This document shows, in pieces, positions 3,094-10,502 of a DNA stretch of 13,326 bases (the first letter of the stretch is position 1; every line of letters starts with the position of its first letter). The stretch covers positions 1 through 13,326 of the forward strand of contig NW_021826171.1 in assembly GCF_006345805.1 (NCBI RefSeq), in the 5' to 3' direction. A program made the position numbers and the translations under genes. Origin of the DNA: Octopus sinensis (taxonomy: Eukaryota). A model generated the notes under the pieces. The model searched no databases. It was not told the DNA's origin and saw nothing but the letters and a program-made list of their open reading frames with translations.

Positions 3094-3978
3094 GTTAAGT
3101 TTTGAATAAGCTCTTTGTCTGCTATGATTATCATAACGTATTGTAATGAAATTTATCCAACCCAATATACAGCACCATGGCGATAATGTATGGCCAATTG
3201 TATGTTAGTGTGTGGTTGACGAGATCTTAATTGTTTGAAATCAGCCTAGCGTTATGCTATTGATTAGAACGTTGAAAATTTCCTGTTAACAAGTGTTTTA
3301 GACTTATAACGTCGCCACAAACAACTTGTCGCATATGACGTCGTAAAACCTAGTGTTGTAAATTCATAAACATTGACCGGACTTGATGCTACTTGACTAG
3401 ACTGGCCCGGACTGGACTTAGTTAATTGAGTAAAGTCCGTTTTTATTGTTATTTTTGTGATTGTGTTTTTGGTGATGGTAATGGTGGTGGTGGTGGCCGT
3501 TGTGGTGGTCGTTGTCGTCGTATCCATTAGGCTTCCAAAAGGATGCTCTTTGGCCGAAAGACATTTAAAAGAGGAAGCAGAATTAAATTGTTGGTGAGGA
3601 ATGAGATATTTAGTTCTGTGCTTGGCCGTGTCTGTTCCTGTCTGAGAATTAAAATGATTGGTTGTAAAGGCATTTCATCCAGCACACACAGCCTCTGTCT
3701 GTGGCAATGTATTTAGTCTTCAATGACAATTCACCTCTAACTTCATCGACGACATCATCATCTTCGTCGTCATCATCATCACCAACTACAATGGCAAAAT
3801 TAGCTGTTGCAACCAAAGTATTTTGACTTTGGTACAACAGCAGATATTTTAGTTGGATACGGCGATGAAGTCAGCATTAGAATCGAAATGGTGTTTTAAA
3901 TAATTGATTCAGTAAAAAGTGAAACGTGAAAGAACTGAAAGGTAAAGTTCTTCAATAATATTTCAACCTTGGTTGACG

Positions 3979-4375
3979 GGCGGCGAGCTGGCAGAAACGT
4001 TAGCACGCCGGGCGAAATGCCCAGCGGTATTTCGTCTGCCGCTACGTTCTGAGTTCAAATTTCACCGAGGTCGACTTTGCCTTTCATCCTTTCGGGGTCC
4101 ATTAAATAAGTACCAGTTACGCACTAGGGGGTCGATATAATGGACTTAATCCGTTTGTATTTCCTTGTTTGTCCTCTCTTTGTTTAGCCCCTTGTGGGTA
4201 GTAAAGAAATAGGTATTGCGGCTGTCTCTACGTTCTGAGTACAAATTCCGCCGAGGTCGACTTTGCCTTTCATCGTTTCGGGGTCGATAGATTAAGTACC
4301 AGTTGTATACTGGGGTCGATATAATCGACTGGCCCCTCCCCCAAAATTTGGGCATTGTGTCTACAGTAGAAAAGA
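3979..4375 (+). mobile_element. SINE family B, dimeric copy (tRNA-like head plus duplicated body)
   Basis: Head GGCGGCGAGCTGGCAGAAACGTTAGCACGCCGGGCG and B-box-like GAGTTCAAAT (4051-4060). The body CTACGTTCTGAGT...CCGAGGTCGACTTTGCCTTTCATC.TTTCGGGGTC...AAGTACCAGTT occurs twice (about 4042-4140 and 4228-4330). Confidence 0.85.
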
Positions 4376-4396
4376 AATATTTTAACCTTGGTCAAA

Positions 4397-4524
4397 GGCG
4401 GCAAGCTGGCAGAAACGTTAGCACGCTGGGGTCGATAAATTAAGTACCAGTTGCGTACTGGGGTCGATGTAATTGACTGGCTCCCTCCCCAAAAATTTCA
4501 GACCTTGTTCCTAGAGTAGAAAAG
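4397..4524 (+). mobile_element. SINE family B, internally deleted copy
   Basis: The same head (GGCGGCAAGCTGGCAGAAACGTTAGCACGC) is joined directly to GGGGTCGATAAATTAAGTACCAGTT. It has the same 3' end as the dimer (CTCCCCAAAAATTT...AGTAGAAAAG). Confidence 0.85.
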
Positions 4525-4897: not shown

Positions 4898-5010
4898 GGC
4901 TGTGTGGTAAGAAGTTTGTTTTCTAACAACATGCTTCTAGGTTCAATCCCACTGTTGCACCTTGCCTTGTGAATGAATTTGGTAGACGTGGACTGAAAGA
5001 AGTCCATCGA
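4898..5010 (+). mobile_element. SINE family A, degenerate and internally deleted 5' part
   Basis: GGCTGTGTGGTAAGAAG...GGTTCAATCCCACTG...CCTTGTGAATGAATTTGGTAGACG...CTGAAAGAAG aligns with 7325-7480 and 9305-9460. Confidence 0.75.
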
Positions 5011-5024
5011 ATATAGTATATAAT

Positions 5025-5085
<61 letters not shown>

Positions 5086-5129
5086 CATAATTAAATCTCA
5101 GAATGAGATTGAAACAGTAATCGCTCGAT

Positions 5130-5509
5130 AATGTAAAGTATAGAGCCATCTTATCATGGCTAACCACATTGGGGAGGGGGTGTTACTGTAGCTTTATAGC
5201 CCCAAGAGATCTTCGTCTCTAGCTGGCTTTAGACACAATATCTGTGTCCTTGGAGTATTTGCAAAGGGAGGCCATCTTTTCCTCGCAAGCCTGAGTGATA
5301 CGCTCGAACTAGTTTCGGGATTGTTGTCCCTCGTCAACGGGCGGTAACCACCAGGTAGCGATGAAAGTGAAGGCTCCTTTGCAAATACTCCAAGGACACA
5401 GATATTGTGTCTAAAGCCAGCTAGAGACGAAAATCTCTTGGGGCTATAAAGCTACAGTAACACCCCCTCCCCAATGTGGTTAGCCATGATAAGATGGCTT
5501 CTATACTTT

Positions 5510-5514
<5 letters not shown>
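5130..5514. mobile_element. fold-back element with long inverted arms, flanked by (TA)n
   Basis: Arms 5130-5267 and 5376-5514 are reverse complements, differing by one 1-nt indel and one substitution. The spacer is 108 bp. (TA)n tracts lie at 5027-5083 and 5516-5564. Confidence 0.95.
5278..5366 (-). ncRNA. type I hammerhead ribozyme-like motif (minimal stem III, variant core)
   Basis: The minus strand reads CGCCCG-UUGACGA-GGGA(CAACAA)UCCC-GAAA-CUAGU-U-CGAGCG. Core 5337-5331; stem II 5330-5317 (4 bp); GAAA 5316-5313; palindromic ACUAGU 5313-5308; putative cleavage between 5307 and 5306; stem I has 5 of 6 proximal pairs plus a long bulged extension. Deviations: U instead of C3, and a GUU triplet. 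Confidence 0.7.
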
Positions 5515-5570
<56 letters not shown>

Positions 5571-7204: not shown

Positions 7205-7312
7205 AATATATATAAAATATATAAAATAATATATACATAAAATACAAAATATATATACAAAATATATACAAATGTATACAAATATATACAAATTTATATA
7301 CAAAATATATAT
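7205..7312. repeat. AT-rich minisatellite of about 10-11 bp (ACAAAATATAT-like)
   Basis: AAAATATATAC / AAATGTATAC / AAATATATAC / AAATTTATATAC units in tandem. Confidence 0.8.
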
Positions 7313-7703
7313 AGGCGCAGGAGTGGCTGTGTGGTAAGTAGCTTGTTTACCAACCACATGGTTCCGGGTTCAGTCCCATTGCGTGGCACCTTGGGCAAGT
7401 GTCTTCTACTATAGCCTCGGCCGACCAAAGACTTGTGAGTGGATTTGGCAGACGGAAACTGAAAGAAGCCCGTCGTATATATGTATATATATATATATGC
7501 GTGTGTGTATTTGTGTGTGTGTGTTTGTCAACCGATGCTGGTGTGTTTATGTCCCCGTTACTTAGCGGTTCGGCAAAAGAGACCGATAGAATAAGAACTG
7601 GGCTTACAAAAGAATAAGTCCCGGAGTCGAGTTGCTCGATTAAAGTCGGTGCTCCAGCATGGCCGCAGTCAAATGACTGAAAGAAGTAAAAGAGTAAAAG
7701 AGT
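7313..7703 (+). mobile_element. SINE family A, full-length tRNA-derived SINE with internal (TA)n(TG)n tract
   Basis: A-box TGGCTGTGTGG (7324-7334), B-box-like GGTTCAGTCCC (7367-7377), and tandem 3' tail (GTAAAAGA)n. Colinear with 9294-9737. Confidence 0.9.
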
Positions 7704-9112: not shown

Positions 9113-9293
9113 ACTACAAATACCTGCACATGGTAGCCGGTACTTCTTGGTTGTCTCACCCCCATTAAAAAATTGGGTTGGTTATCTCCCACCGTTTTAC
9201 GAGAAATCTTGGTACTTTTGGTTTTCTCCCTCAACGACAAAAAAATTGTCTATCCCTCAATAAAACAAACAAAAAGAAAAATGAAAAATTAAT

Positions 9294-9737
9294 AGGCGTA
9301 GGAGTGGCTGTGTGGTAAGTAGCTCTCTTACGAACCACATGGTTCCGAGTTCAGTCCCACTGCGTGGCACCTTGGGCAAAGTGTTTTCTACTATAGCCTC
9401 GGGCCGACCAAAGCCTTGCATGTGGATTTGTGATTTGGTAGCTGGAAACTGAACGAAGCCCGTCGTATATATGTATATATATATATATATATAAATATAT
9501 ATTATATATCTGTGTGTGTGTGTGTGTGTGTGTGTTTGTGTGTCTGTGTTTTCCCCCCAATATCGCTTGACAACCGATGCTGGTGTGTTTACATCCCAGT
9601 AACTTAGCGGTTTAGCAAAACTGACCGATAGAATAAGTACTAGACTTACAAAGAATAAGTCCCGGGATCGATTTGCCCGACTGAATGCGGTGCTCCAGCA
9701 TGACCACAGTCACATGACTGAAACAAGTAAAAGAGTA
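9294..9737 (+). mobile_element. SINE family A, full-length copy
   Basis: AGGCGTAGGAGTGGCTGTGTGGTAAGTAGC...GAGTTCAGTCCCACTGCGTGGCACCTTGGGC...(TA)n(TG)n...CAACCGATGCTGGTGTGTTT...GTAAAAGAGT. Colinear with 7313-7703. Confidence 0.9.
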
Positions 9738-10205
9738 AATATGGAAACTGAAAAAACTTAAACATCTGATAACATTTATATAACATTGGGGTGGCCAAAC
9801 GTCAACAATGTGTTGAAGTATTGAATCAAAAGGATCTAACTTTTTTTTTAATACAGTCTCTTGTGGCCACATCAACTCGATTTTTTTATTGAGGAGATAA
9901 CCGAATTTTGTAATGGCAATTTTTTAATGGGGGCGAGGTAACCAAAATGTATCTGGTAGTCTCACCATAAAAATAGCAGTTAAATCATTTTTATGTCACG
10001 TCCTCTTTTCTTTCAGCTTGGATGAACATCTCGGACATTGATGTAGTTGTAGATATAGTAGCCTAGAAAAAAAAATCAGACTGTAGGGCAGACTTGGTTT
10101 ATAGGTCTACTTGATGAAAGATGAACTCTAGGAACAACATTGAAAATGGCGACAACGATGACGATGACGATGACGACGGCAGTGCCTCCACTCTTTCCAA
10201 TCTTA

Positions 10206-10502
10206 TCTATCTATCCGCTCAGTCGAAGTCGACTCTCGGTCACTCGTTGGATCAGTGTCCTCCTATCAGTTCTATCCTGGGCCGCTTCTTTCAGATTGGC
10301 TATGTCCATTCCGGTATCCCTCTTGAAGGTGTCAAGCCAGCGGGTTCTTGGTCGGCCTCTTCCTCTCTTGCCACTGACCATTCCGAGCATGATGTCCTTC
10401 TCCAGGGATTTTCTCCGCATAATATGACCGAAATATGCCAATCTATGTTTGGTGATCCTAGCTTCTAGCGACATTTTCGGCCTGATCTACTTAAGAACTT
10501 CG
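10206..10502 (-). mobile_element. 5'-truncated RTE/BovB-type non-LTR retrotransposon 3' end
   Basis: The minus strand translates EVLK*IRPKMSLEARITKHRLAYFGHIMRRKSLEKDIMLGMVSGKRGRGRPRTRWLD...VTESRLRLSG*. The YFGHIMRR and G-R-RGRP-RW-D pattern is the known post-RT C-terminus of RTE-clade LINEs. There is a short (ATAG)n tail, an in-frame stop at 10489-10487, and a candidate TSD CCAATCTTA (10197-10205) / CCAAACTTA (10503-10511). Confidence 0.9.

What the first reader, a model, noticed from the sequence alone, without database searches (positions are those of the whole stretch)
5278..5366. Hammerhead-ribozyme fold at the apex of a long fold-back element
Seen: on the minus strand the spacer of the inverted repeat has every hammerhead element in type I order. 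These are stem I (G5338-C5306, C5339-G5305, a C/A mismatch, then three more pairs, then a bulged extension reaching 5366/5278), core UUGACGA, stem II GGGA/UCCC with a CAACAA loop, GAAA, ACUAGU and a GUU site. Known: Penelope-like retroelements and retrozymes carry type I hammerheads, often with a minimal palindromic stem III that forms only as a dimer, as in the newt satellite 2 and avocado sunblotch viroid double hammerheads. Inference: this family is a self-cleaving, rod-like RNA element. This copy has U at C3 (C3 normally pairs with G8) and the poor GUU triplet, so it may be a decayed copy of an active consensus.
Basis: partly seen in the sequence, partly recalled or inferred. Interest (0 to 1): 0.88.

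Follow-up and report, generated by a model that had tools for sequence, protein, structure and literature searches.

The report
Crippled hammerhead ribozyme in retroelement insertion
A real but probably inactive copy of a well-known animal self-cleaving RNA motif sits inside a 431-bp retrotransposon-type insertion, and the insertion's near-perfect "fold-back" shape looks like a by-product of how it was pasted into a (TA)n microsatellite, so it is an ordinary member of a known class.

Summary
It scores 31.2 bits on Rfam HH9 and 46.9 bits on a model built here from 27 independent relatives. It is not chance. It has U at C3 without the compensating A8, and a GUU site. All 27 relatives have C3; 26 have GUC and one has GUA. 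Its 2-bp helix III closes a 2-nt loop, so it can only form as a dimer, and the window holds one copy. It is therefore probably inactive.

The "rod" is two things. One is a natural imperfect 108-nt hairpin around the ribozyme (5268-5375). The other is a 139-bp, 99% identical inverted duplication (5130-5267 / 5376-5514). A 46-nt unpaired tail (5084-5129) lies on one side only. The whole 431 bp is inserted in the (TA)n tail of a SINE copy.

Head-to-head 5'-truncated copies, a tail at one end and an AT-rich target are the published signature of Penelope-like element (PLE) insertion. My best reading is a dead PLE-type double insertion of a hammerhead-bearing RNA. No other family copies could be retrieved. 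It is a new member of a known kind, of low to moderate interest.

The parts
4898..5020 (+). SINE-like repeat copy, internally deleted; its 3' (TA)n tail is the insertion target
   Evidence: Direct-repeat families D16 and D18. Alignment with the paralogous copies at about 7325-7540 and 9306-9560.
5021..5083 (.). (TA)n run forming the left flank of the insertion (first half of the SINE tail)
   Evidence: (TA) runs of 20 nt or more make up 2.3% of the window.
5084..5129 (-). 46-nt 'tail': unique sequence inside the insertion but outside the inverted repeat, on one side only. It contains a 7-bp hairpin (AAUCUCA/UGAGAUU).
   Evidence: The paralogous SINE tails go from (TA)n to (TG)n with no such sequence.
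5130..5267 (-). Left arm: the last 138 nt of the longer, minus-sense copy
   Evidence: Inverted repeat I1. Gapped alignment gives 138/139 identical plus one indel.
5268..5375 (-). Unique centre: a self-contained imperfect hairpin that carries the hammerhead; stem I extended by bulged pairing
   Evidence: Fold of -35.0 kcal/mol, z = -2.0, 7 of 200 shuffles fold as well.
5285..5355 (-). Type I hammerhead motif (full Rfam HH9 model span)
   Evidence: 31.2 bits against a gathering score of 52.
5298..5348 (-). Hammerhead core with loop 1, stems I-III and loop 2. The predicted scissile bond lies between U5307 and C5306. Defects: U5337 at position 3, U5307 at position 17, and a C5340/A5304 mismatch in stem I.
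   Evidence: R1 model scores 46.9 bits, E = 1.8e-11. Direct reading.
5376..5514 (+). Right arm: inverted, shorter copy of the same 3'-terminal 139 nt, without the tail
5515..5563 (.). TT followed by a (TA)n run forming the right flank (second half of the SINE tail). A (TG)-rich stretch follows, as in the paralogous SINE copies.

Best explanation
The 431 bp at 5084-5514 is a dead insertion made by Penelope-like-element (PLE) type target-primed reverse transcription into the (TA)n tail of a SINE.

The template RNA (minus-strand sense) carried a canonical type I hammerhead inside a natural hairpin of about 108 nt. The hammerhead lay about 180 nt upstream of the RNA's reverse-transcription start sites. 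Both strands of the cut target primed cDNA synthesis:
- One cDNA started at the distal start site and ran 292 nt (5375 to 5084: hairpin, arm and 46-nt tail).
- The other started at the proximal start site, 46 nt further in, and stopped at the base of the hairpin (the 139-nt arm, 5376-5514).

Joining the two head to head produced a near-perfect inverted repeat around the hairpin, with a tail at one end only.

The hammerhead is a passenger and is very probably inactive here. It has U3 opposite G8, a GUU site and a C/A mismatch in stem I. Its helix III cannot close in a monomer, and there is no second copy nearby. Whether the template was the end of an autonomous PLE transcript or a short non-autonomous, retrozyme-like RNA is not resolved.

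Shown: the motif, its defects, the anatomy of the repeat, and that the element is an insertion. Inferred: the insertion mechanism, the inactivity, and that the defects came from the template.
For: 1. The hammerhead is real and of the canonical metazoan class. It has the same loop 1 (UUAC) and loop 2 (CAANAA) as Rfam HH9 and as 27 distinct metagenomic relatives. In those relatives, stems I and II covary: 95% of cells are paired and 9 of 12 pairs show double changes.
2. It is an insertion. Joining the flanks rebuilds the (TA)n-to-(TG)n tail seen in two paralogous SINE copies in the same window.
3. The anatomy matches published PLE hallmarks. These are high 5' truncation, an inverted 5'-truncated copy adjacent to the element, a 30-40 bp tail at one end only, and a (TA)n or microsatellite target (Craig et al. 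2021). A purified PLE protein cuts and extends both DNA strands, prefers AT-rich DNA, and starts reverse transcription at two internal sites whose spacing is the tail. Hammerhead mutants still insert, and unprocessed RNA is the substrate (Frangieh et al. 2024, PMC11167929).
4. The perfect repeat begins exactly where a natural imperfect hairpin ends. The unit alone is not rod-like. The rod is therefore a DNA-level duplication.
5. Hammerheads of the same architecture, including 2-nt palindromic helix III loops, lie directly beside degenerate CCCTAA repeats in L011 and L034. Craig et al. describe that arrangement for endonuclease-less PLEs.
6. On inactivity: C3 is present in 27 of 27 relatives although the search pattern allowed C or T. 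The site is GUC in 26 and GUA in 1. C3 pairs with G8, and the only natural variant described is the covarying U3-A8.
7. On inherited defects: the arms differ at 2 of 139 positions, so two or more in-place changes in the 51-71 nt ribozyme have P = 0.05-0.09.
Against: - No PLE reverse transcriptase or GIY-YIG ORF is in the window, and no other copy of the element.
- The family consensus, copy number and any full-length parent could not be examined. No collection held related DNA or ORFs.
- Hammerheads reported in metazoan PLEs are mostly 'minimal' variants with a long helix II and no helix III. Canonical ones like this are assigned to tandem non-LTR retrozymes.
- The tail is 46 nt, against the 30-40 bp described.
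- No target-site duplication can be read inside (TA)n.
- Insertion into a (TA)n run has a chance probability of roughly 0.02-0.06 in this microsatellite-rich window, so the target preference is weak evidence.
- Inactivity is inferred and was not measured.
Confidence: 0.6

Rival explanations
1. It is a solo or partial monomer of a metazoan non-LTR retrozyme. Retrozymes are tandem-repeat elements expressed as self-cleaved circular RNAs. Here a copy would have been made from a circular or linear retrozyme RNA, with the inverted arm as a reverse-transcription artefact (snap-back self-priming at the hairpin). This overlaps the best explanation if PLE machinery did the copying.
For: The hammerhead is the canonical type that Cervera and de la Pena 2020 assign to retrozymes of 170-400 nt. 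The long unit is 292 nt, and the element's GC content is 45%, below 50%. The closest relatives by pattern include many contigs whose hammerheads match the coral retrozyme type. The authors propose PLEs as the mobilisers of retrozymes.
Against: There is no tandem repeat and no second hammerhead in 13 kb. The unit alone is not highly self-paired. The hammerhead is intact in the middle of the copy, so the template was not a monomer cleaved at this site.
Confidence: 0.2
2. This is the reader's reading: a family of rod-like (hairpin) RNA elements whose apex hammerhead self-cleaves, with this copy a decayed member.
For: The whole element folds into one hairpin of -308 kcal/mol in which stems I and II of the hammerhead still form. 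The dimer helix III is computable.
Against: A 99% identical 139-bp duplex next to an imperfect natural hairpin indicates a recent DNA duplication, not a selected RNA rod. The 46-nt tail is unpaired. A cut at the apex would leave both products held together by about 160 bp. The core is defective. No family members were found.
Confidence: 0.1
3. It is a terminal-inverted-repeat DNA transposon or MITE, or a fold-back element, that captured a hammerhead and inserted at a TA site.
For: It has a long inverted repeat. The (TA)n flanks would hide a TA target duplication.
Against: The true ends of the insertion (GGCATAATT... at 5084 and ...CTTTACATT at 5514) are not inverted repeats of each other, because the 46-nt tail lies outside the left arm. 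There is no transposase ORF and no other copy in the window.
Confidence: 0.04
4. It is an assembly or sequencing artefact (a palindromic chimera) around a single-copy hammerhead sequence.
For: Craig et al. note that complex PLE insertions cause assembly problems.
Against: The arms differ by a substitution and an indel. The junction sits at a natural hairpin. Both flanks rebuild a SINE tail.
Confidence: 0.03

Closest known systems
Canonical metazoan type I hammerhead ribozymes (Rfam Hammerhead_HH9 RF02275 / Hammerhead_1 RF00163; the Schistosoma, newt satellite 2, coral and axolotl retrozyme type)
   Same: Type I topology. A 6-bp helix I followed by an internal loop 1 (UUAC / UA). A 4-bp helix II with a 6-nt CAANAA loop 2. 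GAAA. A 2-bp helix III with a palindromic loop that only forms as a dimer. Cleavage after position 17.
   Different: U3 instead of the invariant C3, with no A8 to compensate. GUU instead of GUC or GUA. A C/A mismatch in helix I. The score is below the Rfam gathering threshold, but so are seven intact relatives with 2-nt helix III loops (31.9-51.9 bits).
Penelope-like element (PLE) insertions: pLTR, inverted 5'-truncated copy, 'tail', AT-rich or (TA)n target, hammerhead in the pLTR
   Same: Head-to-head 5'-truncated copies. A tail at one end only. A (TA)n target. A hammerhead 100-200 nt upstream of the 3' end. The ribozyme is left uncleaved in the inserted copy.
   Different: No RT or GIY-YIG ORF and no pLTR tandem are visible. 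The hammerhead is canonical rather than the 'minimal' PLE variant. The tail is 46 nt rather than 30-40 nt.
Metazoan non-LTR retrozymes (Cervera and de la Pena 2020)
   Same: Canonical type I hammerhead. Unit size of about 290 nt. GC content below 50%. No coding capacity.
   Different: It is not in tandem. The unit is not highly self-paired by itself. No circular RNA evidence is available.
Double-hammerhead systems (newt satellite 2, avocado sunblotch viroid)
   Same: The monomer cannot form helix III. A palindrome allows an intermolecular helix III in a dimer.
   Different: With U17 the palindrome grows to 8 nt (AACUAGUU). That would pair A14 with U17 and hide the cleavage site. There is no adjacent second copy.

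Membership tests
Hammerhead ribozyme, type I | Three helices around the core, with helix I open and helices II and III closed | tested here: met
   Direct reading. Full-length alignments to HH9 and to R1.
Hammerhead ribozyme, type I | Conserved core C3-U4-G5-A6-N7-G8-A9 ... G12-A13-A14, with the A15.1-U16.1 pair | tested here: not met
   All positions match except position 3, which is U5337. C3 is present in 27 of 27 relatives where C or T was allowed. The known natural variant is the covarying U3-A8, and here position 8 is G.
Hammerhead ribozyme, type I | Cleavage triplet obeying NUH | tested here: met
   GUU formally satisfies NUH (rule as stated in PMC3884650). It is not seen in any of the 27 relatives, which have 26 GUC and 1 GUA.
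Hammerhead ribozyme, type I | Loop 1 / loop 2 tertiary-contact motifs of canonical metazoan hammerheads | tested here: met
   UUAC/UA and CAACAA match the HH9 consensus. The search pattern fixed these motifs, so their presence in the 27 relatives is by construction.
Hammerhead ribozyme, type I | Rfam gathering score | tested here: inconclusive
   The score is 31.2 against 52. Seven intact relatives with the same helix III architecture score 31.9-51.9 and also fail, so the threshold does not discriminate here.
Hammerhead ribozyme, type I | Site-specific self-cleavage | not testable with these tools
   This needs in vitro transcription of the minus strand as monomer and as dimer.
Penelope-like element insertion | RT plus GIY-YIG ORF, or sequence identity to the end of such an element | tested here: not met
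   No such ORF is in the window. A parent element could not be searched for, because no related sequences are in any collection.
Penelope-like element insertion | 5'-truncated copy with an adjacent inverted 5'-truncated copy | tested here: met
   A 292-nt copy and a 139-nt inverted copy share the same 3' segment, head to head.
Penelope-like element insertion | Short 'tail' extension at one end only | tested here: met
   A 46-nt tail at 5084-5129 lies inside the insertion and is absent from the other end. The described range is 30-40 bp.
Penelope-like element insertion | AT-rich or (TA)n microsatellite target | tested here: met
   Both flanks are (TA)n and belong to a SINE tail. The chance expectation is about 0.02-0.06.
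Metazoan non-LTR retrozyme | Tandem repeats of 150-450 bp, each with a type I hammerhead | tested here: not met
   There is one hammerhead and one unit in 13.3 kb.
Metazoan non-LTR retrozyme | Expression as self-cleaved linear and circular RNAs | not testable with these tools
   No transcriptome data are available.
TIR DNA transposon / MITE | Inverted repeats at the very termini of the inserted DNA, plus a target-site duplication | tested here: not met
   The left terminus is the unique 46-nt tail, so the termini are not inverted repeats of each other.

The most novel reading that the evidence does not exclude
The locus would be a natural footprint of PLE machinery mobilising a short, non-coding, retrozyme-type hammerhead RNA. 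Both target strands would have primed reverse transcription, using two alternative start sites 46 nt apart. That would be direct genomic support for the proposal that PLEs drive the spread of metazoan retrozymes. It would also suggest that lineages with a crippled (U3/U17) ribozyme are copied preferentially, because their RNA stays uncut.
Probability: 0.2. Interest if true: 0.55.

Novelty: new member of a known kind. Interest (0 to 1): 0.3.

Why it matters
Type I hammerheads occur by the hundreds to the hundred-thousands in animal genomes, in retrozymes and PLEs, so one more copy, and a defective one, is not news. The useful point is anatomical. A canonical retrozyme-type hammerhead is packaged in an insertion with the full PLE signature: an inverted truncated copy, a one-sided tail and a (TA)n target. 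If that holds genome-wide, it links the two element classes mechanistically. It would also agree with the 2024 in vitro finding that PLE proteins prime from both DNA strands at two internal RNA sites and do not need ribozyme cleavage. There is also a practical caution. A long perfect fold-back around a structured RNA can be a by-product of insertion and should not be read as a selected rod-like RNA. If transcribed, the 139-bp perfect duplex would be an obvious substrate for dsRNA pathways.

Tried and rejected
- Rfam at gathering thresholds over the whole window found nothing. The permissive run gave the HH9 hit and a 95-bit, sub-threshold MIR6217 hit spanning the hairpin. I treat the MIR6217 hit as an artefact of any long perfect hairpin, because the alignment is almost all compensatory-pair symbols with little sequence identity. 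The many mir-297, mir-1277 and mir-3149 hits are microsatellite artefacts.
- I looked for family copies through translated ORFs. The 85-aa open frame across the element shared no words with any of 5.8 billion proteins. A LINE-like ORF from the window found only three distant metagenomic proteins, 70% identical at best. The source genome is therefore not represented, and I dropped the plan to pull more of it.
- The exact pattern TGANGAGGGACAACAATCCCGAAAC gave zero hits in the metagenome, viral and prokaryote-genome collections. The broader pattern also gave zero hits in viral contigs.
- blastn of the element against the window found no other copy, arm or tail.
- ORFs in the metagenomic relatives' contigs showed no obvious long PLE ORF, so I ran no further search on them.
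- I considered a Helitron and rejected it: there are no 5'-TC / CTRR-3' ends. I also rejected a MITE: the termini are not inverted repeats.
- I checked CpG decay as the cause of the three defects by reading the sequence. None of the three sites is in a CpG context, so I rejected it.
- A literature string search for the SINE sequence gave an irrelevant hit. From memory, the window's SINE and microsatellite content looks like a cephalopod genome. This is untested and nothing rests on it.
- I did not run the HMMER representative search with the 32-aa ORF that spans the arm/tail junction (a possible PLE N-terminus). The query is too short to reach significance, and the genome appears absent from the library.

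Full report
**1. What is in the sequence**

The window looks like non-coding animal DNA. It is full of (TA)n, (TACA)n, (GAA)n and (TG)n microsatellites and carries three copies of a SINE-like repeat. It also holds a LINE-type ORF2 C-terminal fragment, and there is no convincing host gene.

Around the finding, the layout on the plus strand is as follows:

| Coordinates | Feature |
|---|---|
| 4898-5020 | SINE copy |
| 5021-5083 | (TA)n |
| 5084-5129 | Unique 46-nt stretch (the tail) |
| 5130-5267 | Left arm |
| 5268-5375 | Unique centre, 108 nt |
| 5376-5514 | Right arm |
| 5515-5516 | TT |
| to 5563 | (TA)n |
| after 5563 | (TG)-rich stretch |

The arms are reverse complements with only two differences. 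One is C5211 opposite A5432, which is a G·U pair in minus-strand RNA. The other is one extra T at 5499-5500.

**2. The hammerhead**

- Helix I is six positions, 5343-5338 with 5306-5301, including one C/A mismatch.
- An internal loop follows (UUAC opposite UA), then five more pairs.
- The core is UUGACGA.
- Helix II is GGGA/UCCC with loop CAACAA.
- GAAA follows.
- Helix III is two base pairs (A-U and C-G) around a 2-nt UA loop, giving the palindrome ACUAGU.
- The site is GUU, ahead of C5306.

Rfam finds nothing at gathering thresholds. In permissive mode it aligns the full HH9 model to 5355-5285 at 31.2 bits, with E = 1.5e-4 for the whole window against all 4227 families. This is the only hammerhead hit in the window.

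**3. An independent yardstick**

I scanned public metagenomes for GTTAC-N6-YTGANGA-N4-CAANAA-N4-GAAAC. The pattern fixes only loop 1, the core, loop 2 and GAAAC. It leaves the stems, helix III, the cleavage site and position 3 (C or T) free.

Of 34 loci, 32 are true hammerheads and 27 of those are distinct. They have complementary stems I and II and a helix III, followed by GUC or GUA and the 3' strand of helix I. On their alignment 95% of cells pair, against 73% in shuffles and 22-36% when the partner columns are slid. Nine of 12 pairs show changes on both sides. The two remaining loci (L001, L012) match the pattern only. Both have T at position 3 and no stems.

A covariance model built from the 27, with the window sequence left out, scores the window site at 46.9 bits (E = 1.8e-11). 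The next best hit in the window scores 6.7 bits. The pattern-only loci score 19-23 bits and the true ones 59-81 bits. About 20 of the 47 bits therefore come from the way the relatives were chosen, and the rest comes from the unconstrained parts.

The motif is thus a real hammerhead-derived sequence, intermediate between intact relatives and noise.

Failing Rfam's HH9 threshold carries no weight. Seven intact relatives with the same 2-nt helix III loop score 31.9-51.9 bits and also fail.

**4. Is it likely to cleave?**

- **Position 3.** It is C in 27 of 27 relatives although T was allowed. C3 pairs with G8. The natural variant described is the covarying U3-A8 (Cervera and de la Pena 2014; Perreault et al. 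2011). This copy has U3 with G8.
- **The site.** It is GUC in 26 relatives and GUA in one. GUU satisfies the NUH rule but is not used by any relative.
- **Helix III.** Two base pairs cannot close a 2-nt loop, since a hairpin loop needs at least three nucleotides (established RNA structural knowledge). The active fold therefore needs a second copy.
- **The class as a whole.** The helix III loops are AGCU (17 sequences), GC (6) and CG (1), and here UA. All are self-complementary. One sequence has the mutated AGCC, and two HH9-like sequences have long stems. This supports the dimer mechanism described for newt and axolotl repeats.
- **The computed dimer.** A homodimer of the 71-nt motif is 5.4 kcal/mol more stable than two monomers and forms the intermolecular helix. 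With U17 the palindrome extends to AACUAGUU, pairing A14 with U17. That would bury the cleavage site.
- **Copy number.** Only one copy exists in 13 kb.

I infer that this copy is inactive or nearly so. This was not measured.

**5. The fold-back**

The complete element folds into one hairpin of -308 kcal/mol, but it has two parts of different nature.

The 108-nt centre is a self-contained, imperfect, bulged hairpin (-35 kcal/mol, z = -2.0). It is helix I of the hammerhead extended outwards. Immediately outside it the pairing jumps to 99% identity over 139 bp. The unit without its inverted partner is not rod-like: the 246 nt of 5375-5130 gives z = -1.5 and the arm alone z = -1.4.

A sharp step from imperfect to perfect pairing, exactly at the base of a natural hairpin, is what a recent DNA-level inverted duplication gives. 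A selected RNA rod would not show it. The 46-nt stretch at 5084-5129 has no partner on the other side.

**6. It is an insertion, and the tail belongs to it**

Two other SINE copies in the window (about 7325-7540 and 9306-9560) end in (TA)n followed by (TG)n. Joining the flanks of the element (to 5083 and from 5515) rebuilds the same tail. The inserted DNA is therefore 5084-5514, including the asymmetric tail. Its two termini are not inverted repeats of each other, which argues against a TIR transposon or MITE.

(TA) runs of 20 nt or more cover 2.3% of the window, and runs of 10 nt or more cover 6%. Landing in one is mildly non-random.

**7. Mechanism**

The anatomy matches what is described for Penelope-like elements. 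Craig et al. 2021 list these features:
- frequent 5' truncation;
- an inverted 5'-truncated copy abutting the element;
- a 30-40 bp tail at one end only;
- (TA)n or microsatellite targets;
- a hammerhead in the pseudo-LTR.

Frangieh et al. 2024 (PMC11167929) showed the following for a purified PLE protein:
- it cuts and extends both DNA strands;
- it prefers AT-rich DNA;
- it starts reverse transcription at two internal RNA sites, and the sequence between them is the tail;
- hammerhead mutants insert normally, and unprocessed RNA is the substrate.

Read this way, the minus strand is the sense strand. One cDNA started at the distal site and ran through tail, arm and hairpin (292 nt). The other was primed from the opposite DNA strand, started at the proximal site 46 nt further in, and stopped at the base of the hairpin (139 nt). 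A template switch from the short cDNA onto the end of the long one gives exactly the observed strand: reverse-complemented arm, then hairpin, arm and tail.

Snap-back self-priming at the hairpin is a variant that explains the junction equally well. It explains the missing tail on the short arm less well.

All of this is inference from one locus.

**8. Where the defects arose**

If the two arms were identical at insertion, their 2/139 divergence predicts 0.37-0.51 changes in the 51-71 nt ribozyme since then. The probability of two or more is 0.05-0.09, and of three or more 0.006-0.015. U3, U17 and the C/A mismatch were therefore probably already in the template RNA.

That fits the in vitro result that cleavage is not needed for insertion. 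It also suggests that uncut RNAs may be the better templates. Gene conversion between the arms would weaken this argument.

**9. PLE or retrozyme?**

The ribozyme is of the canonical type that Cervera and de la Pena assign to tandem non-LTR retrozymes. It is not the minimal type of metazoan PLEs. The same authors propose PLEs as the machinery that mobilises retrozymes.

Among the relatives found here, hammerheads with identical architecture sit directly after degenerate CCCTAA repeats in L011 and L034. Craig et al. describe that arrangement for endonuclease-less PLEs. Others are on contigs whose hammerheads match the coral retrozyme type, and two pairs of loci (L025/L029 and L009/L033) are HH9 itself. 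This hammerhead architecture is therefore shared across these element classes.

The window has no RT/GIY-YIG ORF and no tandem repeat. Whether the template was autonomous or not stays open.

**10. What could not be done**

I obtained no other copy of the element. The translated-ORF route, three exact-pattern scans and a LINE-ORF search all showed that the source genome is not in the searchable collections. The covariation shown here is at the level of the hammerhead class.

**11. Verdict**

The ribozyme motif is real, and its kinship and dimer-type helix III were correctly recognised.
- The rod is best explained as a by-product of insertion, and this copy is probably dead.
- It is a new member of a known kind, of low to moderate interest.

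Noticed in passing
window 4898-5020, 7325-7540, 9306-9560: Three copies of a SINE-like repeat, about 170 bp long, with a tRNA-like box-B-type motif (GGTTCAGTCCCA) and a (TA)n-(TG)n tail. The first copy has an internal deletion of about 40 bp and hosts the hammerhead insertion in its tail. From memory it resembles an abundant cephalopod SINE; this was not verified.
   Followed up: partly
window 7281-7700 vs 9262-9740: A block of about 450 bp (the SINE plus downstream sequence) is repeated about 2 kb away at 83-87% identity (families D17, D18, D20). It is either a composite repeat or a local segmental duplication.
   Followed up: no
window 10214-10486 (-): A 91-aa open frame resembles the C-terminal end of a LINE ORF2 (it contains a GRGRPRTRWLD motif). 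The best database relative is 70% identical, from a JGI metagenome contig. It is a LINE remnant.
   Followed up: partly
window 4026-4129 vs 4212-4315, and ORF-like frames at 3946-4497: Two 104-bp direct repeats at 84% identity, 186 bp apart, lie in a region that looks like another short interspersed repeat family.
   Followed up: no
window 5197-5446 (-): Rfam's MIR6217 microRNA precursor model scores 95 bits (gathering score 110) on the long hairpin. The match is almost entirely structural, so it is probably a generic long-hairpin artefact. If the locus is transcribed, the 139-bp perfect duplex would still be a plausible source of small RNAs or an RNA-editing substrate.
   Followed up: partly
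L034 (1-123 = 1417-1539), L019 (1-99 = 1775-1873), L011 (1-121 = 988-1108): Metagenome contigs carrying intact hammerheads of the same architecture have 100% identical terminal direct repeats. They are either circular molecules or tandem units of about 1.0-1.8 kb. L011 and L034 have degenerate CCCTAA repeats immediately 5' of the ribozyme, as described for endonuclease-less, telomere-attaching PLEs.
   Followed up: partly
L024 1896-1948 (-) and 2032-2084 (+): Two hammerheads lie on opposite strands, 84 nt apart. In L003 and L018, inverted repeats of 91-105 nt (88-94% identical) overlap the hammerhead. Inverted arrangements around this ribozyme class also occur outside the window.
   Followed up: no
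window 5155-5084 (-), continuing into (TA)n: An ORF (MALYFTLSSDYCFNLILRFNY...) starts 25 nt before the end of the arm and runs through the tail. In the anole PLE the two reverse-transcription start sites lie just inside the start of the ORF, so this could be the first codons of a parent element's ORF. It is too short to test.
   Followed up: no
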